The notes under the pieces were generated by a model. It was not told the DNA's origin. It saw only the letters and a program-made list of their open reading frames with translations, and did no database searches. Source: Geosiphon pyriformis uo1 (lineage: Eukaryota; Fungi; Glomeromycota). Taken from it: DNA of 64,000 bases. This document shows positions 12,396 to 54,400 of the stretch, piece by piece. The first letter of the stretch is position 1. Each line of letters starts with the position of its first letter. A program made the position numbers and the translations under genes. The stretch lies in contig JAAOMT010000445.1 in assembly GCA_016748015.1 (NCBI GenBank), positions 434,001-498,000 of the forward strand. Reading direction: 5' to 3'.

Positions 12396-12463
<68 letters not shown>

Positions 12464-12469
12464 GATAAA

Positions 12470-12527
<58 letters not shown>

Positions 12528-13508: not shown

Positions 13509-13549
<41 letters not shown>

Positions 13550-15301
13550 CGTCTCGTGGCTTCCATTTTCTCCGAGTTGTACTGCTGCGCCAATAAAACT
13601 ACATCCTCAATGTCGATCAATTTTACGGATTAATATTCACCCGAAATTTCCATGGAATTGATAATAATAACCGGTCTTCGGTAACTCCAATTTCGGACAT
13701 GAAAANNNNNNNNNNNNNNNNNNNNNNNNNNNNNNNNNNNNNNNNNNNNNNNNNNNNNNNNNNNNNNNNNNNNNNNNNNNNNNNNNNNNNNNNNNNNNNN
13801 NNNNNNNNNNNNNNNNNNNNNNNNNNNNNNNNNNNNNNNNNNNNNNNNNNNNNNNNNNNNNNNNNNNNNNNNNNNNNNNNNNNNNNNNNNNNNNNNNNNN
13901 NNNNNNNNNNNNNNNNNNNNNNNNNNNNNNNNNNNNNNNNNNNNNNNNNNNNNNNNNNNNNNNNNNNNNNNNNNNNNNNNNNNNNNNNNNNNNNNNNNNN
14001 NNNNNNNNNNNNNNNNNNNNNNNNNNNNNNNNNNNNNNNNNNNNNNNNNNNNNNNNNNNTATTGAAGCTATTCAAAACTAACTGAATGAAAATTTTCATG
14101 AAACTAGTTAACGTCCATTGTTAAATAAAAAAGTTTCCTATTTTGGTATAGACTCATGACTTTTAGGGGTAATCAATGAAATTTTGAAACACGCAATCTA
14201 TGAGTTTGTGTGATACTATTCGAACTTGAGAATGCTAAACAAGTAACAATGACCTGATTTTTTCGAGTTTTTTTTTTTTTTTTTTTTTTTTTTNNNNNNN
14301 NNNNNNNNNNNNNNNNNNNNNNNNNNNNNNNNNNNNNNNNNNNNNNNNNNNNNNNNNNNNNNNNNNNNNNNNNNNNNNNNNNNNNNNNNNNNNNNNNNNN
14401 NNNNNNNNNNNNNNNNNNNNNNNNNNNNNNNNNNNNNNNNNNNNNNNNNNNNNNNNNNNNNNNNNNNNNNNNNNNNNNNNNNNNNNNNNNNNNNNNNNNN
14501 NNNNNNNNNNNNNNNNNNNNNNNNNNNNNNNNNNNNNNNNNNNNNNNNNNNNNNNNNNGTCGCGTTTTTTTCGAATCTGTTTTCATGTTTCTCTTGGACA
14601 ATTTCTTTTTTTGAACATCGTCCACCTCAATCTTGATATTCCTGCCACATTGTACATATAATTCACTCATTTGGATAGATTTTTGGTAATAATATCGAGC
14701 AAACTTTAATGACAGGTCGTTTCTCTTTTTCTTATTACTTAGTTTTAATTCTTCTTCTTCTTGTTCTTCTTCTTCTTCTTTGTTTCTCTTTAATTTCTTA
14801 ATTTTTAATCAATTTTTTTTCATGTATATAAATTTTCCTTTTTTGTTAGTAATATATTCATAAAGAATGTGTCTTTTTATTTTTCTTTCTATAATGGATA
14901 TTATCTTCATAATATCAAATACACATTTCCTATATATCTATAGACACACACAATTCATTTCATTTCATNNNNNNNNNNNNNNNNNNNNNNNNNNNNNNNN
15001 NNNNNNNNNNNNNNNNNNNNNNNNNNNNNNNNNNNNNNNNNNNNNNNNNNNNNNNNNNNNNNNNNNNNNNNNNNNNNNNNNNNNNNNNNNNNNNNNNNNN
15101 NNNNNNNNNNNNNNNNNNNNNNNNNNNNNNNNNNNNNNNNNNNNNNNNNNNNNNNNNNNNNNNNNNNNNNNNNNNNNNNNNNNNNNNNNNNNNNNNNNNN
15201 NNNNNNNNNNNNNNNNNNNNNNNNNNNNNNNNNNNNNNNNNNNNNNNNNNNNNNNNNNNNNNNNNNNNNNNNNNNNNNNNNNNNNNNNNNNNNNNNNNNN
15301 N
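11033..15301. other. Region with six assembly gaps (11033-11450, 12243-12292, 12817-13275, 13706-14059, 14294-14558, 14969-15301)
   Basis: Runs of N; all X-rich ORFs here are artefacts. Confidence 0.98.
13276..13422 (+). CDS. Exon fragment of a response-regulator receiver (REC) domain (hybrid histidine kinase or response regulator); rest of gene hidden in N gaps
   Basis: MPVLSGVETTIEIRR...VPIIAVTTNTLKDQRKVYTDAGM matches the MP..dG...IR / PIIA.TA / AGM pattern of the C-terminal half of fungal REC domains. Followed by donor GTAAGT at 13423; flanked by gaps 12817-13275 and 13706-14059. Confidence 0.75.
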
Positions 15302-23997: not shown

Positions 23998-24235
23998 CAC
24001 TCTCTTTCTACCAATCATCCTGACGGTTACAAACCCTAAAACTAGAAATGATCCAATAACCATATTTAATACCATAATCCAAGTTGCAAAGATGGTTCTC
24101 TTGATAAAAGATGCAACCTCTATATGTTACATAATAACTAGAGCACAACATAATAAAGCTGTTTGTAAAGCTTTATCAGAATGTGTTCAATTCAAGCAAA
24201 AATGTTTAGAGCAAAAGGATCCACCCTTACTTTAA
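23998..24235 (+). pseudogene. Decayed, inverted partial paralog of exon 1 (four-helix bundle) of the MLKL-like gene
   Basis: NTIIQVAKMVLLIKDATSICYII---TRAQHNKAVCKALSECVQFKQKCLEQKDP aligns with NTTIQVAKMVPFIQNAAEICDVIFQLATTAQHNKVVCKALSERVRIKQKWLEQEAP. 5'UTR-like ctctctttctaccaatcatc is also similar. No ATG at the orthologous start, early stop, no downstream exons seen. Confidence 0.85.
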
Positions 24236-29059: not shown

Positions 29060-31664
29060 TTAGGCCAACACAATAGTATTCACACTCTCACGGCTATCTT
29101 GAGCAGCTTGTAAATCTCCAATATGTTGTTCTTTTAAACTTTGTTGTTTTTTATACACCTGAACTCGTTTCATTAAATTATCGAATTTACCTTTAACATG
29201 TTTATTTTTCATCTCAGGAGGATTAGCTGCCATGTATTTTTTCAAGAAATTTTCAGCTCCGTCCAAATCAATCGGCTGGGCATGTAATCCATCCAATAAG
29301 ATCTCGGCATATAACAAATAGGCTCTTGGCTCCTGATTTCGCGTTGCACGTTTCAAAAAGTCCATCCCAGCAGTTTGATCATAACTACTTCCTTTCAAAC
29401 ATGCATGAGCATACATATACTGTGCACGCGCAATCAAACGTCGTCTACCAGGTTGCGATTGAGCTTCTGCTGCTTGTTTTAGATAAACCAATGCTTGATC
29501 TTCATCACGTTCAACCCCTGAACCACCTTCATAAAGAAATTTACCGGCATAGAATTGTGCGAAAAAGTTTTTTTGTTTAGCGTAAACTTCAATGAATGGC
29601 ATTGCCTCATTTATTTGACGATTTTCCTTTATCATTTCTTCTAGATGTTCCCAGTCGGGTAATTGGTCCCCCGGTTTTATGGCTGGAAGTTCTGATATTT
29701 GGACTTCTATTTCGGCCTTTGAATTTGCAAACGTCATTTTTAATAATGATGTTTCATTGATAACTTCGGAGTTTTCAACTCCTGGTAGTGGGGAATTGGA
29801 TCTCGGAGCTTGAATACCCAAATCTGAAGAATTATTTTGGTGAAATAATGAAGATGACGACGAAGATGAAGATGACGAGGATTTATGTTTCTTAAATTTC
29901 TCGGCAAGTGAACGCAATTGAACTGCTAAAGATTGCATGGTAGGACGTTTAGTGGTTGCTTCTTGCCATGCTGATTCCATTAAACTACGATAGTCTGCTG
30001 GAGTGTCTGAAGGAATTGGGGATGGCCTAGAACCAGCTAATATAGCTAGTGCTACCTCGTTAATCGAGGAAATGTCAGTGAATGGTAATGCTTGTGCTGC
30101 AATTTCCCACATCACAATACCAAAGCTATAGACATCCATTGGTTTACTATATGGAATCGATTTTAATTTTTGTGGTGCTGTCCATCTATGCATTGAAATC
30201 ATTTTTTGAAAAACGGTAATTGAATGAGTCAAGGTTAGAATTTTGACTTTAAATTATTCAACTTTACATTCCATTTAATTAATACCTCGTTCCTGCAGTC
30301 AGGTAAGCAATCGAAGTTGTAGCCTCTCCTCCGAATCGGCTCATACCAAAATTGCTTAATTTGGGTGTCATATTTTCGTCGAGTAATATGTTATGACTGG
30401 ATAATTGAGAAATAAAGAAATCTTATTAATCAGAGATTATAAAAATTACATTCAAAATAAAAATTTCTCCTTTTTACCATCTAACATCATGATGAAGAAT
30501 ATCTCTTGAGTGACACCATGAGAGAGCATTAGAAATACTGGCGACAAATTTTGCTTTTAGTTTCCACTCTATTCCCGGGTTGTTATATAGATACGTCTCG
30601 AGGTCACCGAATTCGGCCCATTCGGTTGCCACATATAAATAGTCTGATTTGATTGTGGTTCCATAACTAAATGATGAAAAAGAAAATTGCTTGTTAAATA
30701 TTTAGCAATTCAATATTTAAATAAGGTTCGATCCATAATAAAAATCTCAACTTACAACTTTTCAATAGTAGTACAGCTCTGAAAATTTGAAAGCAAAACA
30801 ATCTGTTTATAAATACTATCTAAAGTCTCTTTTTTTATGTCTTTCATATTCCCAAGACGTTTTAATGCCACATACTCTCCATGTGGAACAAATAGTTTTT
30901 TCTGAATTTGTTTCAATTCACCACGATAAACAGGCGTTTCCTCTTCTGCTTCATCGTCCCCAAAATCTTCATAGTTGATTTTGCTCTCTTCTATTTCTTT
31001 TGGAGTAGCACCAACACCTTTATTGTTTAATGCAATCTTAATTAACTCCCTCTCTTCTCGATCATGCTTTTCACGTTCGTGAATAAATTCTTTGACTAGA
31101 GTGTTTGTCTCGGTAATTACTGATTGAGCATTGGAGATTATAGAATGTGTGTCGAAGTCGAGGTCAAGATGAAAATCAGCTTGAGCCTGATCTAGTCTTC
31201 GTGTGAAATCCTCATGCATTGCTTGTACCTGATTGAAAATTATGAAGAAAGAAGAAGTTAGAGCAGAAAAAAAAATATAGATATTTGAAATGGTTTCTTA
31301 AAAAAAAACCTACATCATTTGCCCCAACAATTTTCATAACTTTCTTCATGAACCGACTACCAAAAGGTCCAGGTGCTCTTAACTCCACAATATAATCCCG
31401 AATTTCTTTTAGGATACTAATATACTGCTCAAATGCCTTTTGGCATTTCTCCGATGGTGCTTCTTGCTCTAACCATTTTTGCTTGATTCTAACACGTTCT
31501 GATAAAGCTTTACAAACAACTTTATTATGTTGGGCTGTAGTTGCCAATTGAAATATAACGTCACATATTTCCGCGGCATTTTGTATGAAGGGAACCATCT
31601 TTGCAACTTGGATTGTGGTATTGATTGCGGTCATTACATTGTCAGTAATTGTAGAGTTTGCCAT
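29060..31664 (-). CDS. MLKL-like protein: N-terminal four-helix bundle (MLKL_NTD/HeLo-like) + TKL-type pseudokinase + Ser-rich linker + ~3 Sel1-like repeats; 749 aa, 5 exons
   Basis: Hand-spliced exons 31664-31314, 31228-30756, 30666-30478, 30396-30286, 30185-29060. All introns GT..AG, phases consistent, total 2250 nt ending TAA. N-terminus IFQLATTAQHNKVVCKALSERV...LDQAQADFHL fits the MLKL N-terminal domain pattern. Kinase motifs VALK, EWAEFGDL, HHDVRCHNILL, KLSNFG, RWTAPQ, DVYSFGIVMWEI. Sel1-like AQFYAGKFLYEGGSGVERDEDQALVYLKQAAE. Confidence 0.88.
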
Positions 31665-31666
31665 AT

Positions 31667-31708
<42 letters not shown>
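31667..31708. repeat. (GAT)n / (ATC)n microsatellite immediately 5' of the MLKL-like ATG
   Basis: About 14 units ending a few nt before the start codon at 31664. Confidence 0.9.
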
Positions 31709-34050
31709 GTGAGTGGTAAAAGAAGAGGTAGGTATAACTGAGATAAGTATGAATAATTTTTAAGATTCAGGTCTACAGAATCTCGAGAAAAAAGTATAAA
31801 ACTTAGTATGTATATCAAATACAACTGCCAAAAATCAAAATTTTGTTTTTTTGAGTCAATCACTTTTGTTTTTTGGACAACATCTTTATATAGAAGATTC
31901 GCTTTAACACACAATATATAAAAGCGGGAAGATATCCTTGGAAAAAAGGTGGATAAAAGTTTTGCCTAGTTTTGTGAAATGTGTAACAGACGCATATCAT
32001 TAACGTTGTTAAAGATAAAATGGGCTTTCGTGTATCACTGAAGCAGGGTCAAATTTTCAAAGTTTATGAGAATGTATCAGGTATGATGAGACAAAGCAGT
32101 AAAATTGAAAAAAAACAAAGCATTCTTTCAAAAGTATGTTTGAACAAAGTACATGTACAATGTTTCTTAAATGATAAACCGTGTGACAATGAATAATTAT
32201 AATTTTAGCAAGTATAGTCTCACAATGTCTGAATTAGTGGTAAAAAATCTTTTTTTGAATCTTGTTTTTCAAATTATTTTTAGATTAAAGTTTGACTGTG
32301 TGATGAATTTCTCATGAGAATTTTTTCTTTGTTACTACTACTAGTAAGACATTGGATCGTTATGAAACAAATCTGTTTGTAATGTATTGTTTTCTTTATT
32401 AGGTGAATTTTAACACTGTCATGAATATATGTACACACGGAGGAATAACATTGTTTTACTAAAATTCACATTAACATCTGGGTAATTTTTTTTTTTAATA
32501 TTGTTTTGTGAGAAACTAATTTCTCAATCATTTCCTAATTCAGAAATAATTTTTATCAATCTCTAGATATGTTACCCTTTTTTTTTCAAATAATTTTTTA
32601 TTTTCCCAAGAAAATTTTTAGAGTGATAATTTGCAAGCTATGAATGGAATAGCAAAAATTTTTTTACCGAAATTTTTAGAGGAAATAATTATATCAATGT
32701 ATAATAAAAAATTTGGTTTGCAAGTAAAGTTAACATTTGATTAAAAGGGAATGTTTTTACTGAATTAATCTCTCGAAAAAAAATTACGAGGGATATTGAA
32801 AGATTTTCCGGGAAAAATGAAGATATCATGATAAAATTCTAAAAAACAAATGAATAATCATATATTTGATAAATGAACAACTTGGAAGACTGTTTAATTT
32901 TTAAAAAAGAAAAGATATTAGATTATAAATATTTTTTATAAATTTGCATGTGATATAAATTTTAATCGCATTCAAATTTTTTCATAGTATCCTATTTTTA
33001 AAAATGCAACATTGAGAATAAAAATTTGGAAACAATCAAAAATTGAATCGATGACTTTTGTTGAACGCCATACTAAATTTTAGTTTAATTGATCTGTTTA
33101 AAATTTTATTTCCTACTAATATCGTGAATTAGCTAAGTAAGTAAAAAATTACTTGAAAATTCGTTTTTGACATGACTTTTCATTAATTTTTCGTTTTCAT
33201 TCAGTTATAATATTTAGTTAAGACCTATTTCCCATCATTATAAATTCAACTATTAAATTTATTTGAAATTGATGAGATTGATATCTTGTTTAAAAATAGG
33301 ATAAAGCATTTATCTCTTTCAAATTTTCATAACTCTAATAAATAAAAGTAGCATAAATTTATTTAGAAAAATAATTTTTTTCCTTAAAGCTCATTTTTGG
33401 ATAAATAAATAATATCTTTATATAAAAATTATAAATAAACAAATTATTAAATTTAATCTATAATGAAAAGCTGTAAAAAATTAGGACACTGAATTCCAAG
33501 ATCCTTTTTTGAATTTTCTTTCTTTCTTGAGATCCTATTGTCTGATTGGGGAACCTAAATAAAGTTAACATTGTGTTCATTACCACACATTTCACAGAAT
33601 TTATTTAGTTAATATCAGTGCATATTAGAGAGTCACAGGTTAAATTTGTCTCATTTCTAATAGAAATCCGAAAAATACCACTTTGAACCAGCAATATTGA
33701 CCAAAAACACAGAAAAATACCCAAAATAAATATTTTTGGTCCTTGTTTCAACTCCTTTCGGGTAAAATTTGTGCTAAACATTATTTACATTACAAGATCG
33801 ACTATCCCAACTGATATGATCAGTTAAAAACGCGTTTCATGATTTTCAAAATGCGTAATATAAAAATGGGACAATGCTAAGCAGTGAAGAACAAAGCTCT
33901 TTATGTTGCGTCGAGTAAGTTAAGAAAATTTCTTAAAATGTCGAAACTATAGAAGCCAAGAAGCATGTTCAAAGAAAATCTTTAGCCCAGTCCTCTATCA
34001 ATTTTCCTAATATTTTTTATACCTGAACTTCTGAAAGTTCTTTCATTCTA

Positions 34051-34123
<73 letters not shown>

Positions 34124-34178
34124 CATTATCATCCAAAATTTCCTACAAAGACGCCGGTCGTTTTTAAATTTTATCACA

Positions 34179-36984
34179 ATGCAATTGATGATTTCTTTCC
34201 TTTCAGCGACACCTATTTTTCGTCTACTTTTATTTATATTAATTTTAATAATTTTGAACATTGAAAATTCCACGGCACAATACACCAAAACTGTTTACCA
34301 GGAAGAAAATACAATAAATACTTGGCCCTTTAAGACATACAATTATCCTGATGGAACAGTAGTATTGAGACTTTCCTCATCCTCAGGAAATTCAGCAAAT
34401 ATTCCTATGCAAGTTTTTTCGCCAAATGGAACATTGACATCATTTAACTTGCAAAGACAAGATTTATTTCCTCAAAAGGCAGATAATGAATTTTTTCCTT
34501 TGTCCCCTGGGTTTATTTTATGGATTTATCCAAGCCAAACTAAGTTAACAGTTGAAAATTTTGATACTTCGAGGACATATTATGGAAATTTGATTTCTTT
34601 AAAAGGGAAAATTGTTCAAAGGTTTGTTAGAATTCCTCAATTATATGTTTTTTTAACTACCAAACACCATCATTTTTCACCTTATTTTTTTTTGATCTGA
34701 TCCTTAGTGGTATATTTTTGGGATCGACGCAGTTATATGATATTGTAAATAACGTTGATCAGTCATCAAGTTTCATGCTTACCATTCAAACAAAGAATAC
34801 CTCCGAGATTCAATGGAAAATTTATGCAGAGCCGTAAGTTTTTTACAATTCATTTCTCTTGCTTTACTAATCAGCTGTATTTTAAAAATTTCAAAGTTAA
34901 AAATTTGACCCTTTTGTTGCAATAGAAATCCTTTAGCTCCGAGAATTAAAAAACTTTATGATGGTATCTTGGCAGTCCCATATAATATTAGCACACATAA
35001 AGCATTTGCAACAGTTGAGGGTGGTTTTGGCCTAGCATTTTCTACAAAGTCTTTTATAAATAGTGGTAGAACAAATTACACGATTCCTCCAAAACTACCA
35101 TCAAATTTGAATGTAACCTCGAACCTACTGGAGTTAGTAACTTATGTTACTTTTATGGAACCTAATGCAACAAATTTTGGGAAAATCTTTTTAATCGATC
35201 GAAAAATTAATGCCTCTCAATATATCGACGACAATATAACCCAATGTTTTGCTAAAATTTATGGAACCGGGTTTGAATGTAGTATTGGCAGCGATCGAAT
35301 ATCTTTCTTAAGAAGTGGTGCTGTATTAGTTATTACTCCCTCGGTCACTAGGTCTCAATTAAATAAACCGTTACCTTACGGTGGAATGTTGATTGAAGAT
35401 CCTGTTGGTTCGCTCGGGATTTATGACGAAAATGGATTTTTTAAACAAATGTGGCCTCTGCCTGTCCCTGATCAAGATTTCGGTAATTTTTTTTATGATA
35501 TCTTGCCAAATAATACCATTTGGGGAGCTTATAAGGCAGGTGAAGATACGAATATTACCGTATTTCAAGCTGATTTACCGAAATTCTTTTCAGGTCCGAA
35601 ATACATATCATTTTTCAAACTTTTCTCTCTCTTCGTTTTTGGTGAACTAGTTTTTTATTTTTTTCATTTTACAAATCTCACTTTAACATTAGATAAAGGA
35701 TTTAATAATCCAACAATTGATTCAACATCACCTTCACCAAATACCGTAATCCCTCTAGGGTTTGATAAACTTATCATCACTTATACTATGCAAATTAATA
35801 TGTCAGTAAAAAACGTTTCCATATATCAAAAAAATGGGGACTTTTTGAATTTACGACAAACTTTTTCGGCACAATCACCTTATTGTATATTAGAAACAAA
35901 TGGAAAAACAGTTTCGGTCACAGTACTAAGCAGTACTTTTAACATTCCTAACGCACAATATTTTGTTACTATTGATAATAATTTCGTAAAAAATCAATTA
36001 TTGGATGAACCTTTGTTTGGTGTTGCTAAAAATGATTGGACCTTCACAACAGCAGGTAATTCGAATTTTAAAATGAAATTTTTTGAGTACGAATTAATCT
36101 AAAATTAATATTTTCTGATCTAGTTGAAAGAAAAAATGAATTTGCAGGTAATTTTTGCTCTTTTCATTATCAATAATTTCTATTTGATATCTTAAAATTG
36201 AATTTTCTTTTTTTTATAAAAACTTTTAGACTCATATGATGGTTTGCTACGTCTAACCCCAGACGGTACCTCCTTTTTCAAAAGACTTTCAAAAACAGAG
36301 GCTAAAGAATTTATTGAGCAATTACGTATCGAACTATCGCAAATTATTCCGATCGACTTAACACGAATTAAAACTTCAAATCGTCAACAGGACGACTCCT
36401 CGACTCCTAAATCACAAACTCTTCTCCAGTTTACCATTCTCACTAATCAAAATGCTTCAGATGGTAATTCATTGGAAATTGCCAATAATTTAAATATTTT
36501 GATTCAGAATAAAGCTATAACACAAATTAGCCTCAATAAACACACTTCATTTTTGGATAGTGATTTTGGATATAAACTTAGTCGTGAGTATTAAAATTTA
36601 TTTGTTTTCTGATATTACTTGAACAGATTAAATATATCTATTAAAATTTTTCCTCCATTGACTTTAGCAAATCTGTGGGAAAAGTTAAGAATTAAATTAA
36701 TTGTGGTTGGCGTTCTCTTGCTTGCCTTAATTATAATTTTTTTCTGGGCCAGGTGGAAATTTCCAGAGGTAAATTATAGATTAATTAATACTTGAGTAAA
36801 ATTAATCTACAAAAAACTTATATTGACCATTTTTTGTAGGGTAAAAACTTTATCATTTTTGGTCAAACATTACTTTTTGTTGATTTGGGTCTTGATATTG
36901 CATTTATTTTAAGAAATGGGAAAGATATTCCAATACTTTTTATCCCAAGGTAAACCGTTTTGCCTATTTTTAAAGAATTTCATG

Positions 36985-37015
<31 letters not shown>

Positions 37016-37640
37016 TCGATCAAACTTTTATTTTTACACTAATTTTTTTTTTCAACAGCCTAGTTATCCTTATTTCTTCTGTCACCTTCAATTCAGCATT
37101 GGCGGTATATATCTTAAGTTATGAAATTCGAAAAAACCCAGAATGTCATCAATGGTTTCGAAATTACACCAAACCAGCCTCTTTGCTCACTATACTAGCA
37201 AGCGCTGACATTGAAGCTCTAAATCTTTTCTCGTCCCGTTTTGCCGGGCTGAAAATATTTGAAGCACCTTTTTCAAAGTATATCCAGAAGCTTATTTTCT
37301 GGGGTAGTTTTTGTAACTTATTTATTGAGGATATACCACAATTGATTATTCAAGTATGTATTTTTGCAATCTGTAGACATGAATAAGAATTTGATCTTTT
37401 AAAACTTTTATTATACTAATTCCTAACTATTTAATCTTAATTTTGCAGATATTTTATTACCAATCAAGCGTGGCTTATGATAATATACCTTTCCTGACTC
37501 TTATCACAAGTTCCATTAGCGTAATTTGTAATTTAATAGGTCGCGGGTATGATATTGCTGTCAAAAATACATCTAAGGATAGCGATAATCATAATGACAT
37601 AGATATGTCATCTAATAGAAACCTCGACACCAATCCTTAA
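34179..37640 (+). CDS. Receptor-like multi-pass membrane protein: signal peptide, beta-rich ectodomain with Ig-like (Big_5/SbsA-like) module, juxtamembrane alpha/beta domain, ~6 hydrophobic segments with XK-related-like motifs; 891 aa, 10 exons
   Basis: Hand-spliced exons 34179-34621, 34708-34833, 34926-35593, 35693-36055, 36124-36147, 36230-36583, 36668-36768, 36840-36949, 37059-37353, 37449-37640. All introns GT..AG, total 2676 nt in frame. Signal peptide RLLLFILILIILNIENSTA|QY. Ig-like PTIDSTSPSPNTVIP...YFVTIDNNFVKN...WTFTT. Hydrophobic segments LIVVGVLLLALIIIFFWA, LLFVDLGLDIAFIL, LFIPSLVILISSVTFNSALAVYIL, ASLLTILASADIEAL, FWGSFCNLFIEDIPQLIIQIF, IPFLTLITSSISVICNLI. Confidence 0.85.
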
Positions 37641-41588: not shown

Positions 41589-42546
41589 TATTGCTAAAAA
41601 ATTTTGGTCTCTTTTTTTAAATATTGTTAATGCTTAATTGTTGTAAATTCATGTTTTCTGGAAGTAGTTGAATCTCTAATACTAAATTTATTTTCAAATT
41701 ATTTTTTATAATTTGAACTATATGACTTATAAGTAGAATAACCAATTCTATGCCAGTTATTTTATATAGTTATATTGTAATAAACATCAACTTTTTCTTA
41801 GGAATTACTCATCTGAAAGTTCACTAAAATGTGTAGTTATTTTGTAATAAAAGTTAACTTTTCTACAAGAATTTCATTTGTAGGCTACCCTAATGGTTAT
41901 TATAAAAATAAAAAAAAAATAAAAAAAATAGAATTTTATTAAAAAAATCGTTTTTTATTCAAACTTGAAGTTATTAATAGTTTTACTGAAATTGGTAGCT
42001 AATCAATTTCAAAATATTAGTTGGGTCTTAAAAAATTTCAAGTGTAATTAATTCGAAAATTTAAGTTTTTAAATTATTTGATATTTATTATTTTTTTTTA
42101 AAGAAGATTAATATATTTTTAAGATAAGATTGATTTTAAAGAAGATAATTCCTAGTTAAATATATTTTCTTAAAGAGAGAAATTTTTTTTTTATACAACT
42201 TGTTATATTATTAGTCTATAAATTTGAATTTTTCTCTTTGCTATAATTTTAATAAATTAACAATACATTTTGGCAAACTACAAGTTATTTCAGTAAATTA
42301 TTCATAATTTCGGTGAATTTCTACAAAATTTGACGAATTTTTGAATGTTACATAGTTCAAAATATTGTGTAATTTAATCATTCTAATTTTTATTATACAA
42401 ATTGGGTTATTAATTAAATAGTAATATTTAATAATTTGATTAAATGATAAGTAATAATTTAAAATAATATTAATATATGCTAATTAATGATAAAAATTAT
42501 AAAAGTAATTTTATGTTAATTACTGATTAAAATTCTATTGGTAAAA
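41589..42546 (-). repeat. 3' LTR of outer Ty3/gypsy element
   Basis: Reverse-complement similarity to LTRs 46863-47786 and 55606-56580; preceded on the - strand by PPT-like gctcagtcttaaagaaaaaatta. Confidence 0.8.
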
Positions 42547-45500
42547 TAATTTTTTCTTTAAGACTGAGCTTTATTCAAGTTCAAGTATTATCTGTAATTT
42601 CAAGATAGTAATCCAAAATTATTGAAGTAATTTGGTTTGAAACTTGTTAAAATTTCAGTTTTGTGAGTTTGCCAATATATTGAATCTTTATTGGTTAGAG
42701 TATTGGATTTTATAGAACATTTTTACAAGTATAAAATAAGTTATAAAGTCTATAGACAGCTTTAAGTTTGTAATAAGTGTTTGTTAATTCAACTGCTGTT
42801 TTGAATTCATTGTAAATTTGTTTTTGTATAGCTATTAAAATAAGATTTGTTGTTTCAAGTTTCAGTTTTTATTCATAAAGTGTTCTTTTAATATAAAAAT
42901 ATATATATAGTTTTGTTTATTAAAAAATAGTTGAAGCTTTTATTAAATTGTAATATTTGGTAAAATATCAATAGAAGCAAATAAAATATTTTCTTTTAAA
43001 GCTTGCTTTAAGAGTTTTGGTAATTGAATTTCAAAAGAACTTCTTATGTTTTTTCTATAAGAATAATATTTCTAAGAATTATTTATTACTGAAGCTGTTG
43101 ATTTTTTTTGAATGTAATTAATTTGACTTCCATTAATTATTATGAATAAGTTAGAGAGTGTTTTTAAAGCTAATATTAATTTTTGAAATATTTGTTAAAT
43201 GTTTTGGAAAATAAACATTATAATGTTAAATGAAAATAAAAATTAAAAGAATAAAAAGAAATTATTTTGGTATAGAAATTTTATATGTTTTTTTTTTTTT
43301 TGGTTTGGATATTTTCTGGTAATTATTTTACTATTTTTGTTTTAATGTTTCTGTATTTTTAAAAAAAATAACTAATAAAATTAAATGTTTAGGTTTGTTG
43401 TTGTTCTATTATAATTATTGGTTCTAAATTTTGAGAAATATTTTCAGAGTTAATTAAAAAAGAATGTATAGCAATTTGTGAAATTAATAGTTCAAGATTG
43501 TTTTTAGAATAATAGTGTTTTAGTCAATCTTTATGTGCAACTTTGGCTAAAATTTTGTCTTCAAGTTTTAACTTGTATGATTTATTGTCTAATATTTTGT
43601 GAATATAAAATAGTCTGTTCTATTTATGTTCAAATTTGTTACTTTATTGTTTTTTAGCCTTAGTTCTGTATAAGAAAACTTTGTTTTCAACTTTAAATTT
43701 GTTGATGACTGGTGGCAATTTGTTATTATGCTATTTTTTTTGTTGTATTGAATATGTTTTTATTGTGAAATTAATTGGTAGTATTGCTGTTTTCTTATAA
43801 GTAAAATTAAATGATATATGTTTTGTAATATCTTGTTTTAATGTTCTATAAACTAATAACATTAATAGAATAAAAATATCTTATTTCTGCTCAAAATCAG
43901 TTGAGATTTTGGCTAGTAATTTACACAGTATCTGGTTAAAATGTTTTATAAGTCTATTTGTTTGGAGATAATAAAATAATAATAAAAGTTTTTGACATTA
44001 AATCATTCACAAATTTTTTGTATCAAGTTGTTTACAAAGTGTGTTCCTTGGTTAGATAAGAGTTTAATTGGATATTTATGTTTACAAATGATGTCTTTAT
44101 AAATGAAATTTGCTATTGTCTTTGCATCTGCTTTTTAGATGGCTCTGGCTTTAGGACATTTAATAAAATAATCTACTATAACTGTTATATATCAGTTTTT
44201 TGAGTGGTGATAAGTAGTGATCCGACTAAATTAATTCCAATTTTGTCAAAAAATTGTTTAATTTTGATTGAATTTAATAGTTCAGTAGAGCAAATTTTTT
44301 CTCTTTTTTGACAACTATTACAAGATTCTACATATTGTCAAATATTTTTTTGTATATGGAACCAAAAGTAATGTTCAAGTATTTTCTAAATAGTGCTATT
44401 TTTTTCTAAGTATGCTGCTAAAGAGTTTGTGTGCATGTTGTATAAAATTGTCTTTTTTTTATTTTTTTGTACTAATTGGAGTAAGATGGTTGAATTTTGT
44501 TAATTTCAATAATAAATTTTGTTATAATAGATAAAATATTGTTTTGATTGTTGTTGTAATTGGTGTTTTTTATTTAAAAACAAGTTTTTAGGCATGATAA
44601 GTGTCTCTAAATAGTTTTTAATGTTGGTGTAATTTTTTGGATCCATTGTTTGTTGATTTGTTGATTGTTGTTAAGCTGATAAGTTGTAGTGAATTGTTTA
44701 TTAGTGTTAATCTTACCTTATTTTTAAGAAACTATTAATATTTGTGTGTAATTTTTTTGGTTTGTGGTGTACAATAAATTTGTAATCAGCAAAAAAGTCA
44801 ATCCATCTAATTTGTTTGGCACTAAGTTCAGATCTTTTTTTGTTAAGCCATTTAAGGTCAATATTATCTGTAATAATATTAAATTTTTTGCCATTTCAAA
44901 AATATTGTTAAAAATATTTAAAAGCCTATATAATAGCTGTTGTTTCTAATTCAGTTGATCCATATTTTGTTTCTGGGGGTTTTAGTGTTCTGCTAACATA
45001 AGCAATAACTTGTTTATTGTTATTGTTATCTAATTATAATAAAATAGTACCAAATGCTGTATATAAAGCATTAATAATTAATTTGAACTATTTGTTAAAG
45101 TTTGAATAAACAAAAACTGTTGTTGTTATTAATTTTCTTTTAAGAGTTTTAAAAACTTTTTGCTGTTCATTAGTTCATTAATATGGGGTGTTTTTGTTAA
45201 TAAAATAATTGAGTAATTTTGCAATTTCAGAAAATTTTTTGATAAATTTTTAATAATAAGAGACTAATCTAATAAATTTTTTTTAGTTTTATAGTGTTTT
45301 AGGAAATTTTGAAGTTTTTAGCAGTGCTAATTATTTTTGAATTGGGTTGAACTCTATCTTTGCTAACAATGTGTTCAAAAAAAATTAAGCTTGTTTTTCT
45401 AAAGTAATATTTTTCAATATTTAACTTTAATCTTGCTTTTTGTAATTATTAAAATACTTTTTACAAGTAGATTAAATAAGCTTTAAATATTGAAAAGTAT

Positions 45501-46862
45501 ATATTAATATTATCAAGATAGACAATTACTAATTGTCATAAGAATTCTTTATATACAATATCTATAAGTTGCTAGAATGTTGCCTGTATATTGCAAAGTC
45601 TAAATAGTATTACATTAAATTTGTAATTTTTTTCTTGGATGGTAAATGCTGTTTTGGGTTGGTCTTTGAGATCTATTTCAACTTGCCAATATCTGCTTTC
45701 CAAGTTTAAAGTTAAAAAAAACTTGGTTTTTTCAAGAGCATTTAGCATGTTGTTAATTCTTAAAAGAAGGTAGATATCTTCAATCATCACACTATTGAAT
45801 TGACAATAGTCTACACAAAATTTGATTTTCTTATTTTTTTTTTACCAAAAACTACTGGTAAAATTCAAAGACTTTTTGATAGTTAAATAAGACTATTGTT
45901 AAGCATTCTTTGTATTTTTTTTAATGAATTGATGGCTGGTAAGTAAAACTTAATAGACTTGTTGGTATTTTAGTGGAGCATTTTTTGTATGGATTTGGTG
46001 TTAAACAAGATTGGTTTTTTCTAAATTATTGTTGTTTTTTGCAAAAATATTAGCATATTCTATAATAAACTGTTTCTATTATTTTTGTTGTTGGAGTTCT
46101 AAGGACTCTATGTTGATTCAAGAAAGTTTTTCTTTAATAAGATAATAGTTTTCAATAGTAGACAAAATATTTGGGTTTGTAAAAAGGGTGTATCTCATAA
46201 TTTCAATGAAATTAAAAACCATTTAAGAAATTTTATCTTAGAAGATATTGCTATGTATTATTTTAATTTTTAATCTATTTAATAAAACAATAGAGTAGTT
46301 GTTGAGATTATAAAATATAACTTGGAATTTTTTTATTTTTTTTGGAATATAGACATTTGAAATTAGAATTTCATGTTTTAAATAGATTTGTTGGGTGGTG
46401 GTTTTGAGCAAATGTAAATTTTGTGATATTCTCCAAAGAATAATATATTAATTGGTTATAGAAGTCGAAAAATTTGGTAAAATTTATTTTGTGTATTAAG
46501 AGCTATATTTACTGGCATCATAAAATGTCCAGTTAGACCAAAAACTTAGGTTTCTCTATTACTTTTGCCTAATTGTTCTTAATTATTAACTAATTATAAA
46601 CTCGAAATGTTAATTAAGAGTAAATAAATTACTTGAACAATTTTTTCAGCATGCTCAATTTTGAATGGTTTATCAGTTTTGTTTTGTAGCATGATAATAA
46701 TGTCTTTTGTATATTCTGTGTTTATAATTTTTCCTCTAATATTAATTTTTTTGCTTGCAAATAATGATTGGAAAGCAATTTAAACTATTGCTTCTGGTGG
46801 AATTTCAAAAGCAATTCTGAAATTGATTTTTGTTAGGAATTTGGGTTAAAAAATTAAGGTGT

Positions 46863-47786
46863 TGTTACCAATAGAATTTTAGCTATTAATTAGCATGAAA
46901 TCATCCTCATAATTCCTACTATTAATTAGCATATACTATTATTATTTCGATTATTACTTATTATTTGATCAAATTATCAAATATCATTACTCAATTAATA
47001 ACCTAATTTGTACTATAGAAATTAAGATGATCAAATTACACAATACCTTAAACCATTTAATATAGTCAAAAATTCGCCGAAATTGATGAAAAATTGGCCG
47101 AAATAATCAATAGTTTGTAGAAATAACTTGGAGTTTACCAAAATGTATCTTTAGTTTATTGAAATTGGAGCAAAAAAAAAAGTACAAGTTCAAAGACTAG
47201 TACTACAACAAGTTGTATAAAAAAAAAGCTTTTCTCTTCAAAAATATGTATCTTCTTATAGTATCTTACCATAATATATTACTTTAGATATCTTAATTAT
47301 AACAAATTATCTTTTATAAAATCAAATAAAAATTAAATATTCAAAAATCAAATTCTTAAATTAATATACTTGAAATTCTCTCAACACAACTAACGTTTTG
47401 AAAACGTTTTCCTTGTTAGAATTCTATTTTTTTTACATTTTTTTTATTTTTTTCTTTTCTTTTCTTATTATAATCATTAGGGTAGCCTACAAACAAAATT
47501 TCTGTAAAAGAGTTGACTTTCATAGCAAAGTAACTATACATTTTTTAGTGAGCTTCCAGACAAGCAATTCTTGGGAAAAAGTTGACATTTACTACAATAT
47601 AACTATACAAAACAACTGGTATGGAATTGGCTATTCTATTTATAAGCCCAGCAGTTCAAATTATATGAGATAATTTGAAAATAAATTCAGTTATTGGAGG
47701 TTCAACTGCTTTCAGAAAATGTGAAATTAACAACAGACAGACATTAACAACATTCAAGAAAAAAGACTAAAAAACTTCTAATAACA
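46863..47786 (+). repeat. 5' LTR of inner element
   Basis: TGTTACCA...TAATAACA termini, followed by PBS; direct repeat of 55606-56580. Confidence 0.9.
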
Positions 47787-50700
47787 TTTGGTGCTCTTTT
47801 ATAGAAATAATACAGCAATAACAACTTCAAAGTGGCGACCACACCAGACACAAAAACTCTAGAGTATTACCAGTCAATTTACATTCACTACAAGCAAAGA
47901 TTCAACATCCAAGACGAAATTAAAATTTTCAAGAAATCATTATACCAATATATTGAAAATCACAACATTTCAGAAGTTAGAAACAATCTCTACAATAATT
48001 TAATACACTACTCACAATTGGAAACTGAAGACCTTAACAGTAAAACACTTGCCACTTACTTTCAAAAACTTAATTTTAACATTATTTAGTATTGTAAAAA
48101 AAAATACCCAGTACAGTCTAAATACTCTCTTAACTTTAAATCAGAACCAAAAAACAGCAACAACAGAAAACAGAAAAAGAAAATTCGAGTTAGCCATACA
48201 ACTTACATACCAAAAACAACTGCCAAATACTTATAAACACCTGAACAAAGAACCAATATCAAATTACCACTTTCTATTACATCATTTCTAATTTTACTTG
48301 CTTAACTACAAATACCAAATTCACTACTTATTTATTTCTTAAGACTAGAAGATTTTCAGTCACCTAAAAGTCCTACTTAATAACAGAAACTTATATCAAC
48401 TAGCACCAATATTATTAATTACTTACAAGAAAACAAAAGTAATTATTTAGAAAACTTAGAAAGTAAAAAAACTGAATTAGAACAAAAAGATACCCCAAAA
48501 AATAAAGAAAAAATGACAACTGCTTACCTTACAAAAATTTCAGAATTTACTAGTAAAGATAATGATACCAGTCCATAAGAATGACTTGACAAAGTCCAGA
48601 AAACAGAAGATGTAAATAAATAGAATACAGCAAGAATGCTCAAAGCGATCCCATATTTTCTCTAAGGAACAGCAGAAGAATGGTTTAAAAACTTAGATGC
48701 ATCTTTTGAAACTGGCAAGCATTTAAAAATGCTTTTTTACAATAATTTAATAATAACAATACTTCTATTATTCTTTGAAATTGGTTTCGAAATATTAAAC
48801 AAGAACCAAGTGAATTAATTATAACTTATCTAAGAAAATTCAACAAATTTTTCAGAAGAATTTGCCAGTTAAAAACAAATGAATACTATTCTAATGCCCA
48901 AATTTTGGATTAATTTATTGCTAGATTAAAAAATAAACTTATAAAAAAAGTGCATCTATATTCACTTGAAAATTTGGTTACTGCTATCCAACATACAAAG
49001 AATTATGAAAATTGGTTAACTTACAAAGAAAGTTGAAAATTATTTTACCAACCAACAAAGGCAACAAAAAACACAAAAATATTAGCCACTACAATGATAA
49101 AACCAAAACAACTACTTATTATTATCAAACAGTAAAACCAAAATTGTCACTATTGTGGGATTCTAGAACATTGGAAATAAGACTGCAGAAAGTTACAAAA
49201 AGACCAACAAAACAGAAGTAATTAACATTATTTTTCAACACAACAATCTCATTATTAGCCTTTACCATCAGCCTATTATTCTTCAAGATCTCAACAATAA
49301 AACAATTACTATTAGCCTGCCCTACAGCAGTAATATTTACAATCTATACCAATCTAACAGTATCAACAACTATTTATACAACAATATCAAGTACCAACCT
49401 AAAAATTGGTCCAGCAAAACCAGTTCATATTTCAAAATCAATTTCAGAATAATAACAACAGAATCAACCCAAACAACTAATTAGTTCCCCAAAATTCTGG
49501 TCAGCAAAGATCCAATCATTACCATACTCAATTCAGTTATCTTACAATGCCAGAAAAATTGGATTTTCAACAAACTGCACTTTTTGAAGATAAAGCTACA
49601 GCACCAAAATTAAACCTTTCAAACAATACTATTTGACCAGCTCAAATTGCTCAATATGCCAACCTCTTAGATATTTTTCCATTTGAATTTAAAGCAAATG
49701 AATTATCATTCTTGCTTAGCAATACAACAGTCAATAAACAAAAAACAATTACAGCAATATATACAGAAGCTAAAGTTAAAGGCAAACCTATTTGGTTAAT
49801 TCTAAATAGTGGATTAGTTAAAAGTATCATTACCTACTAATTAATGCAACAACTTTAACAAACTGTTAACAAATCTGTTCAGACAGTCATTGTTATAGCA
49901 GATAAGATAAAAAAGACATCAGTAGGAAAAATTAATAATTTTCCATTTACTATTGATAGAATCATCATTCCAGTTAAAGTTTTAGTCATAGATGCACCTT
50001 AATATCAAATTCTGGTCGGAAATGATTGGCTTTTCAAGGCCAATACAAGTTTAGATTGAGAAATCCAAGAATTGAAGATTTTATACCAAAAACAATACAC
50101 CAGAGTACCTGCTATCTGTAATACTTTTAATAAAAGATCTGAAAAAGCCCTAGTATTTGAATTTGAAGAGAAGAAAGAATTACCAATTACTGAAATCTTT
50201 ATGGCTCTTGGATCACCATCCAATTGGACTGAGAAAACAGAACAAGAATTCTTTGAGGAGACTAAAGAATAAAATGTAGTTAAATATTCTATACCAAAAC
50301 CACGGAAACAACCTTCTTATATTTTACTTAAATGCAAAAATTACAACAAAAAACTTTCATCAATGAAAGCATGTATTTTTCCAGAAGAGGAATATGAAAC
50401 TTACACCTGCTATTTTTGCAAAACATGTCATAAAAAACGATTTGAATACTCTAAATGAAATGAAAAATGGAACAACACTTCTTGTCTCACATGTGAAGAT
50501 ATGCTACCAGAAGAATACAACTGGATTAATGTTATAATAAGAGGAGAAGTATGTAATCAAATCTGCCAATATGCCCTATCAATCTCAAAAAAATCAAAAG
50601 AGAAACATCCTTTAATATAGCTTATAATAGTGCTTTCAACAAACTCTACCACTATCCTCATGATGCTGAAATGATTTTTGACTTAACAATAGCTTTAATC

Positions 50701-51079
50701 AATAGAGCCATACAAGAAAATGTTCACCAAATAAAAGAAATTGAATACATTAAATACACAATAGAATTGGCTAAATTCAATTATGGAAATAAAGTAGAAA
50801 CATATTACCAAATTGCAAGTTACACTTATCCAACCCAAGAAGCTCAAATTCAACAATTAGAGCAAATAAATATTTAATTGTGTAAAAAATACATCATGTC
50901 TTGTGATAATAAATGGTGTTCAGAATGCTATGTTTTTAGCATTCTCTTATTCAATAAAGATGACCAAAAGGAAATTAAGTTTGGAGAACTCAAGCCAAAA
51001 GAAGAAATTGCAACAACTCTAATCTACTTTACTAAGAACCAATCAGTCCTACAACTCAAATATTTCAACAATAATGATT

Positions 51080-51475
51080 AAGGAATCAAACCAGAAAAAG
51101 TACATGATATAGATGCTGAATATGATCTATAATACTCAAGAAAAAATACTTTGGTCCTCCAACCAAAATTTTTAATAAAAACTAACCTCAGAATTGCTTT
51201 TAAAATACTATCAAGAGCAATGTTTCAAATTGCATTCAGATTATTATTAGTAAGCAAAGAAATTAATGTTAAAAGAAGAATTATAGATGCAGGATACATT
51301 ATGCTACAGAATGAAACTAATAAACTATTCAAAATTGAACATGCTAAAAAGATTGCCCAAGCAATTTACCTACTTTTAATTAACATTTCAGATTTACAAT
51401 CAGTTAACAACAAAAAACAATTAGAAAAAAGTGAAAAAAGAACTCAAAATTTTGGTTTAACTGGACGATTTACAG
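51080..51475 (+). pseudogene. Retrotransposon-encoded dUTPase domain (decayed)
   Basis: KPEKVHDIDAEYDL (AGYDL motif), QIAFRLLL (motif 2, degenerate), RRIIDAGY (GxIDxGY), KKIAQAI, SEKRTQNFGLTG (RG..GFGSTG motif). Confidence 0.75.
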
Positions 51476-54400
51476 TTCCAGTAAACATAGCTTTTAATAC
51501 ACAAAATGAATCTTACTAGATTTTTTAACTTCTTTAACCAATTACCATTTTACTTTTTGGAGAATATCATAAAATCTATACTTGATCAAAACCAATTACC
51601 ACCCAACAAATTTTTAAATCCAATAAACAAATCTGTTTAAAACATAAAATCTCAATCTCAAATATCTATATACCAAAAAAAATGAAAAAATTTCAAGTTA
51701 TATTTTACAATCCAAACAACTACCTCATTGTTTTATTAAATAAATTAGAAATTGGAATCATATATAGCAATATCTTTCAAAATGAAAACTTTCAGATGGT
51801 CAGCAATTTCATCAAAATTGTAAAACATACACTATTCTCAAATCCAAATATTATTGCTACTACTGAAAACTAACACTTTTTGAAAGAAAAACTCTTTCGA
51901 ATTAATATGAATTCTTTAAAACCTTAATAATAAAAACAATTGAAACAGTTAATAGCTGAATTCGCTGATATATTTGCAAAAAACAACAATGATTTGGAAA
52001 AAACTGATATTGTTCAACATCAAATCTACACAAAAAATACTTCACCAAAATAACAACAAGCCTATCAAGTTCTATCTGCTAGCCACTAATTTATTAGAAA
52101 AGAGATTCAAAGAATCAATAATAGATTAATCTAACTATCAAGAAGCCTATAAATCTTACCAGTAGTTTTGGTTAAAAAAAAAAATAGAAAAATCAGATTT
52201 TGCATTAACTATTACCAATTGAACAATGTGATAATTGAAGATGCCTACTCTTGTTCCAGAATTGATGACATGCTAGATGTCTTAGAAAAAATCAAGTTCT
52301 TCTCAACTTTAGACTTGAAAAGTAGATACTGACAAGTTAAAATAGATCCAAAAGATCGACTCAAAACAGCATTTACCACCCAAGAAGAAAACTATAAGTT
52401 CAATATTATGTTTTTTGGACTTTGCAATATATTAGCAATATTCCAGTGACTTATGAATGTTGTATATGAAAAACTTTTATGGCAATCAGTAGTTGTCTAT
52501 TTTGATAACACTGATGTGTATTTACCAAGTTTTGAAGCTTACCTTATCTACTTGTAAGAAGTTTTTCAATGATTACAGAAAGCAGAATTAAAGTTGAATA
52601 TTGAGAAATATCACTTTGGAAAAACAAGTCTAATTTTTTTTGGACACATTATTAGCAAAAATGAAGTTAAACCAAATTCAAGAACAATCAGTGCTGTTAA
52701 AAACTTTCAAACTTCCAAAAATACCACAGAGCTACAAAAATTTGTGGGATTAGCCTCCTATTATTAGAAATTCATAAAAAAATTTTCAGAAATTGCCAAA
52801 CTATTCAATTATCTTACCAACAAAAACATATCATATAAATGGACTAAAAAACAACAGAAAGCATTTGAAACTCTCAAAACAAAATTAACAACAGCCCCAG
52901 TTCTTGCTTACTCAAACTTCAACAAATAATTCTAACTAGTCACTAATGCTTCACACATAGCATTTGGTGTTATTCTATCATAATTAGATAAAAATGGCCA
53001 GGAACAAGTCATTGTTTATGTCAGTAGAACACTTAAACCAACAGAACTCAAATATAGTTCAACTAAATTAGAAGCTACCACAGTCATTTGGGCTCTTAAA
53101 TACTTTCAACAATACTTGAAGAATGGAAAAAAATTTGATATTTTAACTAACAATATTGGCCTTAAATGCCTCAATAAAAAGAAAACTGAACAAAGTGTTA
53201 AACAGTCTCAATAAAATAACTTTTTAGCAGACTACAAATATATTGTACATTATAAACCAGGAAAACTACACACTAATGTTGACAGTCTCTCAAGAATGAG
53301 ACAAGATTAATACCAACAACAATTCTACTACAACTTACCAACCTATTAACAAAAATAACTAAACAATAATAGATCTCAGAAATTACAACAACATTAAAAA
53401 CTATTTAAAGACTCTTACTATATTAGAAAATGGGTCTCCAAGTAAAAAACATCAATTATAATACCAATCAAAACAATATTTTATACACCATAACAAAATC
53501 TATTATAAAAATTGCAAAAATTTAAATCAACTACTCAGATTAGTACAAAAGAATGAAAAAGAAACAATTCTATACAACATGTACACAAATTTTTTCTCAG
53601 CACACTTGGGAAGAAATAGAACAATTCAAAGAACTTTTAAACATTATTTTTGGCCCCACATGCAAAAAGACATTTGACAATATGTAAAATTTTATGATAG
53701 TTGTCAAAAAAGAGAAGGAACTCGCCCCACAGAACTTTTAAATCCAATTAATGTTGGACAATCTTTTGACAGAATTGGAATTAATTTAGTCGGACCATTA
53801 CTTATTACAACTCAAGAAAATTATTATATTGCAGTTGTAATAGATTATCTCACCAAATGGTTTGAAATGAGAGTCATTTAAAGAGCAGATGCAAAATCAG
53901 TAGCAAATTTCATCTATGAAGACATTATTTGTAAACATAAATACCTAACTGAATTTTTATTTAATCAAGAAATACATTTTGTGAACAACTTAATACAAGA
54001 AATTTGTGAACAATTCAATGTCAAAAGACCTCTATTATTATTTTATTATCCCTAAACAAATGAACTTGTAAAATGGTTCAACAAAACATTATGTGAAGCT
54101 TTAGCCAAAATCTCAACAGATTTTGAGCAGAAATAGAATATCTTTATTCCATTAGTGTTATTAGCCTACAAAACACTAAAACAAGATACTATAAAGCACA
54201 AACTATTTGATCTTACTTATGAAAAGACAGCAATATTACCAATTAATTTTACAATAAAAACATATCCAGTGCAATCAATCAATGAAGAAAACTTTCAAAA
54301 AACACTTCAAAAAAAAGTCTACACTTTTCTTAGTACACTGAAAAGAAAAAAACAAATAGTAGCTACTTATATTAAACACTTCTAAGCTTAACAAAAAGAA

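What the first reader, a model, noticed from the sequence alone, without database searches (positions are those of the whole stretch)
29060..37640. Head-to-head pair: MLKL-like executioner + Ig-ectodomain receptor with Xkr-scramblase-like tail - candidate fungal immune/cell-death module
Seen: the only two intact genes in 64 kb are divergently oriented with ATGs ~2.5 kb apart (31664 and 34179), isolated among TE relics. Established: MLKL four-helix bundles and fungal HeLo/HeLo-like domains permeabilise membranes in regulated cell death; XK-family proteins (Xkr8, CED-8) expose phosphatidylserine in dying cells; fungal and plant immune sensor/executor genes are often genomically paired. Inference: a surface sensor and a cytosolic 4HB-pseudokinase-Sel1 executioner may be co-regulated as a non-self-recognition or symbiont-control circuit. 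Adjacency alone does not prove this, since both families are probably expanded in this lineage.
Basis: partly seen in the sequence, partly recalled or inferred. Interest (0 to 1): 0.8.

Follow-up and report, generated by a model that had tools for sequence, protein, structure and literature searches.

The report
Two immune-like genes, probably chance neighbours
In the symbiotic fungus Geosiphon pyriformis, a gene built like the animal cell-death protein MLKL faces a predicted surface protein that carries half of an animal lipid-scrambling protein; both genes are real, but their relatives do not travel together, so they look like neighbours rather than one circuit.

Summary
Both genes are real and divergent, with start codons 2.5 kb apart. 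Gene A (749 aa, GenBank G9A89_009058; four introns spliced in an RNA run) has an MLKL-type helical N-terminus, a degenerate kinase and a Sel1-like tail. This family was already noted in Glomeromycotina. Gene B (891 aa, 10 exons) has a signal peptide, an ectodomain with CopC/Big_5 Ig-like and SEA-like domains, an anchor helix and a membrane unit. In a 95-pLDDT model of its closest paralog, that unit best matches Xkr scramblases (Z 10-12; the N-terminal repeat of Xkr8/Xkr9), and an acidic triad is kept. The pairing is not supported. The genome has at least 25 A-type and 71 B-type loci, and this is the only head-to-head A-B pair found. The closest paralog of each has unrelated neighbours, eight family loci in five other species are unpaired, and the one run assembled A but not B's first exons. 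No one-to-one orthologs were available, so the cross-species test is family-level only. 'Only two intact genes' overlooks a receiver-domain gene broken by assembly gaps. This scan had already noted both families on other DNA of this genome.

The parts
29060..31664 (-). Gene A (G9A89_009058, 749 aa, 5 exons): MLKL-type helical N-terminal domain, helical linker, degenerate TKL-type kinase, Ser-rich linker, Sel1-like repeats
31314..31664 (-). A exon 1: MLKL_N-like helical domain (aa 1-117)
   Evidence: No direct Pfam hit. 6 of 9 in-genome family members hit PF22215, best E 9e-6. The profile finds MLKL structures only weakly, E 0.3-0.6. hhalign to a PF22215-positive Diversispora protein gives 98% probability. 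Top Atlas hit 0.95 is a Mucoromycota cluster with some MLKL_N members.
29915..30934 (-). A kinase domain (aa 217-465; exons 2-5; coordinates approximate). No GxGxxG loop, VALK Lys240 kept, no alphaC Glu, HRD reads HHD (Asp335 kept), DFG reads NFG, APE reads APQ: predicted pseudokinase
   Evidence: PF07714 E 6e-39; motif positions; alignment. Loss of activity is inferred.
29063..29650 (-). A C-terminal Sel1-like helical repeats (about aa 555-748)
   Evidence: PF08238 E 4e-7. This is the only well-modelled part of the AlphaFold model, pLDDT 60-88.
31665..34178 (.). Intergenic 2514 bp. The 1.55 kb next to A (31694-33212) is 72-81% identical to DNA upstream of the A paralog on C385, which has no B gene upstream
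34179..37640 (+). Gene B (891 aa, 10 exons: 34179-34621, 34708-34833, 34926-35593, 35693-36055, 36124-36147, 36230-36583, 36668-36768, 36840-36949, 37059-37353, 37449-37640): predicted surface protein with about 14 N-glycosylation sequons in the ectodomain
   Evidence: homologous exons in the same order in in-genome paralogs
34179..35593 (+). B signal peptide and N-terminal ectodomain (about 410 aa); fold not tested, no Pfam hit
   Evidence: homologs in Gigasporaceae and Geosiphon
35693..36055 (+). B CopC/Big_5-type Ig-like domain (exon 4)
   Evidence: 14 of 83 family members hit Big_5, best E 1e-5; paralog model matches CopC at Z 10.7, rmsd 2.1, 99 aligned
36230..36583 (+). B juxtamembrane alpha/beta domain, SEA-like (exon 6)
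   Evidence: Paralog model matches SorCS2 957-1066 (Z 8.5) and the Trop2 ectodomain (Z 8.0); moderate evidence
36668..36768 (+). B anchor transmembrane helix (exon 7), which would place the Xkr-like unit's start in the cytosol
   Evidence: Hydropathy, model helix 253-281; topology inferred
36840..37640 (+). B Xkr-like four-helix membrane unit (one repeat) with Asp708/Asp712 and Glu820-x-x-Pro823, then a cytosolic tail of about 30 aa
   Evidence: Paralog model: Xkr4 Z 12.0, Xkr9 Z 11.8 (chain 8-190), Xkr8 Z 9.9 (13-195); PF09815 in 4 of 83 members, best E 3e-4; conservation
24026..24223 (+). Decayed copy of gene A's first exon (53-60% identity, stops follow, no other exons)

Best explanation
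Two independent genes, each from a family expanded in Glomeromycotina, have come to lie side by side in a repeat-rich part of the Geosiphon genome. They do not form a dedicated circuit. Gene A most likely works as an MLKL-like switch: an inactive kinase domain and Sel1-like repeats hold back, or release, an N-terminal helical bundle that acts on membranes. Its layout and homology are shown; pseudokinase status, membrane attack and any cell-death role are inferred. Gene B most likely works as a surface glycoprotein whose ectodomain binds something outside the cell. Its single Xkr-like repeat with buried acidic residues may thin or scramble the membrane or bind cations, perhaps as a dimer. The fold is shown on a paralog model; activity and dimerisation are inferred. 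If the two families ever act in one process, it is not through this gene pair.
For: Family sizes: at least 25 A-type loci and 71 B-type loci including relics. This is the only head-to-head or intact-intact A-B neighbourhood in those lists. A's paralog on C639 (40-66% identical by exon, open frames) faces a methyltransferase and an HMG-box gene, with no B in 20 kb upstream or 10 kb downstream. A's paralog on C385 kept 1.55 kb of A's upstream DNA but has no B in 20 kb upstream. B's closest paralog (C541) lies among LPMO_10-like genes and an elongase, with no A. Two Diversispora MLKL-kinase clusters have no B within 10 kb, and six B loci of Ambispora gerdemannii (2), A. leptoticha, Rhizophagus irregularis, Funneliformis mosseae and Gigaspora rosea have no A. 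Each family clusters with itself: 9 of 25 A and 11 of 71 B within 20 kb. Run X1 assembled spliced A but nothing on B exons 1-2, and its word share for the whole stretch (0.19) is about what the A contigs alone cover. Gene B sits in a Geosiphon-only clade of 19 copies (96/95 support), and none of the other 18 has an A-type locus near it in the lists.
Against: No one-to-one ortholog of either gene was found outside Geosiphon, so a young species-specific pairing cannot be excluded by synteny. A short B-family relic (about 55 aa, from another subclade) lies 5 kb downstream of the broken C385 A paralog; the chance of one such neighbour among the 23 other A loci is about 0.23. A kinase fragment without an MLKL-type domain hit lies about 4 kb upstream of a B locus on C675, on the opposite strand; it was not read. 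The RNA evidence is one small run kept as contigs, which cannot prove absence. Locus lists are lower bounds, and flanks of most B paralogs could not be fetched.
Confidence: 0.8

Rival explanations
1. One reading: a dedicated two-gene module in which B senses an outside cue and activates A (or A's Sel1/pseudokinase guards B), driven from a shared divergent promoter, giving lipid exposure and membrane rupture for non-self or symbiont control.
For: Both genes are intact, divergent and isolated among retroelement relics. Both resemble parts of animal cell-death machinery. Fungal two-gene death clusters exist (het-S/nwd2; about 80% of fungal gasdermins with their protease; PMC10197012). A B relic lies near the C385 A paralog.
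Against: The pairing is not repeated in about 23 other A loci, about 70 other B loci or 8 loci of 5 other species. A's upstream region was duplicated without B. B was not assembled in the run that shows A. B's cytosolic face is only short loops and a tail of about 30 aa. Neither protein has a RHIM-type core or a protease, the links used by known fungal pairs.
Confidence: 0.07
2. The neighbourhood is accidental in origin, but the genes are loosely co-regulated, or both families gather in the same repeat-rich, fast-evolving compartment (a 'defence-island'-like bias) without direct partnership.
For: Expanded kinase/Sel1 and orphan genes in Rhizophagus lie in gene-sparse, methylated, TE-rich regions (10.1101/2021.03.30.436303). 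Two independent A-B proximities under 10 kb were seen against 0.28 expected under a uniform model.
Against: One of the two proximities is this ascertained locus and the other joins two broken copies. The same paper notes Geosiphon has a non-compartmentalised genome. No co-expression was seen.
Confidence: 0.13

Closest known systems
Glomeromycotina MLKL-Sel1 proteins (TCDB 1.A.105 homologs noted in silico, PMC8778642)
   Same: MLKL-like domain plus Sel1 repeats, found in Glomeromycotina; gene A aligns end to end with Diversispora MLKL_N-kinase-Sel1 proteins at about 25% identity
   Different: Gene A belongs to a small Geosiphon subfamily whose N-terminal domain is too divergent for a direct Pfam hit and which has a Ser-rich insert; no function has been tested for any member in the papers I found
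Animal MLKL (necroptosis executioner)
   Same: Order of helical bundle, helical linker and kinase lacking catalytic motifs
   Different: Extra Sel1-like tail; different degenerate motifs; no RIPK3/RHIM partner known; membrane attack untested
Xkr scramblases (Xkr4, Xkr8, Xkr9, CED-8)
   Same: Best structural matches of B's membrane unit. D-x3-D and E-x2-P spacing is like Xkr8 D26/D30/E141 and Xkr4 D125/D129/E313-P316 (PMC12334663, PMC8500837)
   Different: B has one four-helix repeat, not two. It has a 650-aa ectodomain and an extra anchor helix, and no recognisable regulatory tail. Sequence identity is about 10%. Scrambling is untested.
Fungal two-gene cell-death clusters (het-S/nwd2; gasdermin/protease)
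   Same: Adjacent genes, one with an MLKL-related membrane-targeting domain
   Different: Those pairs recur across genomes and have an amyloid or protease link (PMC10197012); this pair does not recur and shows no such link

Membership tests
MLKL-like (4HB-brace-pseudokinase) | N-terminal domain homologous to MLKL_N | tested here: met
   Met at family level: PF22215 in 6 of 9 aligned members, hhalign 98% to a PF22215-positive protein, weak MLKL PDB hits. No direct hit for gene A alone.
MLKL-like (4HB-brace-pseudokinase) | Four-helix bundle fold of the N-terminal domain | tested here: inconclusive
   The AlphaFold model is helical there but pLDDT is under 50 with a 7-sequence alignment; no fold search was run on it
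MLKL-like (4HB-brace-pseudokinase) | Kinase domain lacking catalytic motifs | tested here: met
   No Gly loop, no alphaC Glu, NFG for DFG; Lys240 and Asp335 kept. Sequence-level only.
MLKL-like (4HB-brace-pseudokinase) | Oligomerises and permeabilises membranes on activation | not testable with these tools
   Needs expression assays
XK/Xkr scramblase family | Xkr N-terminal repeat fold (TM1-4 with intramembrane helices) | tested here: met
   On paralog P0018 (44-61% identical to B over most exons): Xkr4, Xkr9 and Xkr8 rank 1, 2 and 9 of 48,161 chains, Z 12.0/11.8/9.9, rmsd 3.7-4.2, 151-169 aligned. Z under 13 can be chance for helical bundles, but PF09815 hits in 4 of 83 members agree.
XK/Xkr scramblase family | Two internal repeats, 8 transmembrane helices | tested here: not met
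   The protein ends after one repeat of about 180 aa
XK/Xkr scramblase family | Buried acidic stairway residues (Xkr8 D26, D30, E141) | tested here: inconclusive
   Matching spacing (D708, D712, E820-x-x-P823); conserved in 82%, 78%, 72% and 100% of family rows. The residue-level structural alignment was not available, so equivalence is inferred from position and spacing.
XK/Xkr scramblase family | Phospholipid scrambling activity | not testable with these tools
   Needs a proteoliposome or annexin-V assay
Fungal two-gene sensor/executioner cluster | Pairing recurs among paralogs and orthologs | tested here: not met
   family-level and incomplete sampling
Fungal two-gene sensor/executioner cluster | Recognisable molecular link (amyloid motif or protease) | tested here: not met
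   No RHIM-type core in any exon and no protease domain. Other amyloid motif families were not scanned.
Fungal two-gene sensor/executioner cluster | Co-expression | tested here: inconclusive
   One contig-only run: A spliced, B exons 1-2 absent

The most novel reading that the evidence does not exclude
The Glomeromycotina B family (650 clusters at 50% identity with E up to 0.001, fragments included) are ligand-gated 'half-Xkr' surface proteins that scramble or thin the plasma membrane when the ectodomain binds. In Geosiphon this copy has been recruited beside an MLKL-like gene into a young, co-regulated death or symbiont-control circuit. The full claim, with the pair functional, has a probability of about 0.07. 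The half-Xkr receptor part alone is more likely (about 0.3) but does not depend on this locus.
Probability: 0.07. Interest if true: 0.85.

Novelty: new variant of a known kind. Interest (0 to 1): 0.3.

Why it matters
If the pair were a circuit, it would be the first surface-receptor-to-MLKL death module in a fungus, and in one that houses cyanobacteria. The evidence says it probably is not. What remains of value is gene B's family: an apparently undescribed fusion of a receptor-like ectodomain to one Xkr repeat. It gives a natural test of the proposal that the N-terminal repeat's acidic vestibule drives Xkr scrambling (PMC12334663). Gene A is one expressed, intact member of an MLKL-Sel1 family that has been noted but not tested. 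Neither point needs the neighbourhood.

Tried and rejected
Single-exon PDB and Pfam searches found nothing for A exon 1 or B's membrane exons; only family profiles and the fold search did. The AlphaFold model of gene A was too poor (mean pLDDT 44.5) for a fold search. Foldseek on the B paralog model was swamped by antibody Ig domains. Unannotated 867-aa and 826-aa genes inside Diversispora MLKL clusters looked like possible B genes but are another MLKL-kinase and an unrelated protein. A segmental duplication of the whole pair on C385 was rejected: homology stops 1.55 kb upstream of A, and the B relic there is closer to another subclade (63-69% against 46%). Literature searches found no description of the B family. 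Left out: I did not build or search a joined spliced model of either gene. Searches were exon by exon, or used public proteins returned by the tools (P0008 for A; paralog P0018 for B). Only 5.9 kb could be laid on reads, so B exons 3-10 were not tested for RNA.

Full report
Source. Homolog searches returned proteins of Geosiphon pyriformis (locus tags G9A89) on contigs whose lengths equal those of this assembly: 189,892 for C385 and 570,197 for the window's contig. The window is C623:434001-498000 of a 128-Mb, 792-contig genome.

Observation. Exon-by-exon frame checks give two intact divergent genes. Gene A (minus, 31664-29060) has five exons. Contigs of run X1 skip exactly its four introns, and the public protein P0008 has the predicted 749 aa. 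Gene B (plus, 34179-37640) has ten GT-AG exons and 891 codons, with homologous exons in the same order in paralogs. The ATGs are 2514 bp apart. The rest of the window is mostly retroelement relics. It also holds a receiver-domain-like exon at 13276-13421 among assembly gaps and a decayed copy of A's first exon at 24026-24223, so 'only two intact genes' is not established.

Gene A. Pfam gives a TKL-type kinase (aa 217-465, E 6e-39) and a Sel1 repeat. The first exon has no direct hit. However, 6 of 9 aligned in-genome relatives match MLKL_N, the profile finds MLKL structures weakly, and it aligns at 98% probability to a Diversispora MLKL_N protein. The kinase keeps the beta3 Lys and catalytic-loop Asp but lacks the Gly loop, the alphaC Glu and the DFG Asp, so it is probably inactive (inference). 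The AlphaFold model was reliable only for the Sel1-like part. MLKL homologs with Sel1 repeats were reported in silico as restricted to Glomeromycotina (PMC8778642).

Gene B. Pfam does not place it. A profile of its main membrane exon finds 650 clusters at 50% identity, many of them fragments. Those I named come from Geosiphon, Ambispora, Funneliformis, Acaulospora, Entrophospora and Rhizophagus, with Gigasporaceae. I folded the closest paralog, P0018 residues 236-700, with 83 sequences: pLDDT 95, pTM 0.88. It shows a CopC/Big_5 Ig-like domain (Z 10.7), a SEA-like domain (Z 8.0-8.5), an anchor helix, and a unit whose best matches among 48,161 chains are Xkr4 (Z 12.0) and Xkr9 (Z 11.8), with Xkr8 at Z 9.9. 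The Xkr9 and Xkr8 matches cover their N-terminal repeat. Four of 83 members also hit PF09815. B has Asp708, Asp712 and Glu820-x-x-Pro823, conserved in 72-100% of rows. This is the spacing of the Xkr8 D26/D30/E141 and Xkr4 E313/P316 residues; the Xkr8 residues are needed for scrambling (PMC8500837, PMC12334663). Equivalence is inferred, because the residue-level alignment was not shown. B lacks the second repeat, so it is Xkr-like but not a family member by the two-repeat criterion. Its N-terminal 410 aa were not modelled.

Is the pair a unit? Within the genome I counted at least 25 A-type and 71 B-type loci, relics included. Only three A loci have a B within 20 kb: this gene, its own relic in the window, and the broken C385 paralog. 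That paralog has a short B relic of another subclade 5 kb downstream on the same strand. A uniform model gives P about 0.13 for at least one A-B neighbourhood within 5 kb, and 0.23 for one further neighbour within 10 kb among the other 23 A loci. The C385 copy shares 1.55 kb of A's upstream DNA but has no B in 20 kb upstream. The C639 paralog faces a methyltransferase. B's nearest paralog lies among LPMO_10-like genes. In other species, two Diversispora MLKL-kinase clusters contain no B, and six B loci from five species contain no A. Both families cluster with themselves instead. Gene B falls in a Geosiphon-only clade, and gene A's best outside hits are 25% identical, so these are family-level tests and not ortholog synteny. 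In the single available run, A is assembled and B's first two exons are not. That run is small and contigs cannot prove absence.

Mechanism. Most likely the two proteins act separately. A is an MLKL-like switch in which a pseudokinase and Sel1-like repeats control a membrane-active helical bundle (layout shown, activity inferred). B is a glycosylated surface protein whose single Xkr-like repeat may thin or scramble the membrane (fold shown on a paralog, activity inferred). Known fungal two-gene death clusters recur across genomes and are linked by amyloid motifs or proteases (PMC10197012). Neither feature is seen here.

Earlier scan notes. Other agents reported both families on other DNA of this genome, and three further proposed partners for MLKL-like genes that did not hold. 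I treat these as unchecked leads. They do show how many partner readings this family invites.

Limits. Joined spliced models were not built or searched. Flanks of about 30 B paralogs could not be fetched. Locus lists are lower bounds.

Verdict. Observation partly confirmed; protein identities supported; module not supported (probability about 0.07). Interest 0.3, carried mainly by the half-Xkr surface-protein family rather than by the pair.

Noticed in passing
window 11451-13421 (+), among N gaps 11033-15301: Exons of a third gene. The piece at 13276-13421 resembles a response-regulator receiver domain (Pfam E 0.09), probably the end of a hybrid histidine kinase or related protein, cut by assembly gaps.
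   Followed up: partly
window 24026-24223 (+): Decayed, inverted copy of gene A's first exon about 5 kb beyond A's 3' end; about 80% DNA identity to the C385 paralog and 77% to gene A.
   Followed up: partly
L044 (G000:C385:154500-164499): Recent paralog of gene A (89% DNA identity over 2.5 kb) with a stop in exon 2 and a frame break in exon 5, annotated as G9A89_001607; a B-family Ig-domain relic lies at L044:7765-7950.
   Followed up: yes
G000:C675:263647-264066 (+), near B locus C675:256443-258129 (-): A kinase fragment without an MLKL-type domain hit lies about 4 kb upstream of a B-family gene in divergent orientation; kinases are very numerous here (670 candidates), and the DNA could not be fetched.
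   Followed up: no
L049-L050 (G000:C541:434000-453499): B's closest paralog and a broken tandem B copy alternate with at least three LPMO_10-like genes, which may be a local tandem duplication of a B plus LPMO unit.
   Followed up: partly
window 41589-60166: Nested, partly inverted copies of decayed Ty3/Gypsy-like retroelements (71-84% identity over 1-3.6 kb) that produce the alternating GC and AT skew.
   Followed up: no
L058 (Diversispora epigaea; P0009, P0010): MLKL_N-kinase-Sel1 proteins with an extra, apparently intact kinase fused in front of the helical domain, a possible one-chain kinase plus MLKL arrangement (or merged gene models).
   Followed up: no
G000:C623:205139-205537 (+): The strongest MLKL_N match in the genome lies on the same contig about 260 kb from gene A and belongs to a different subfamily.
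   Followed up: no
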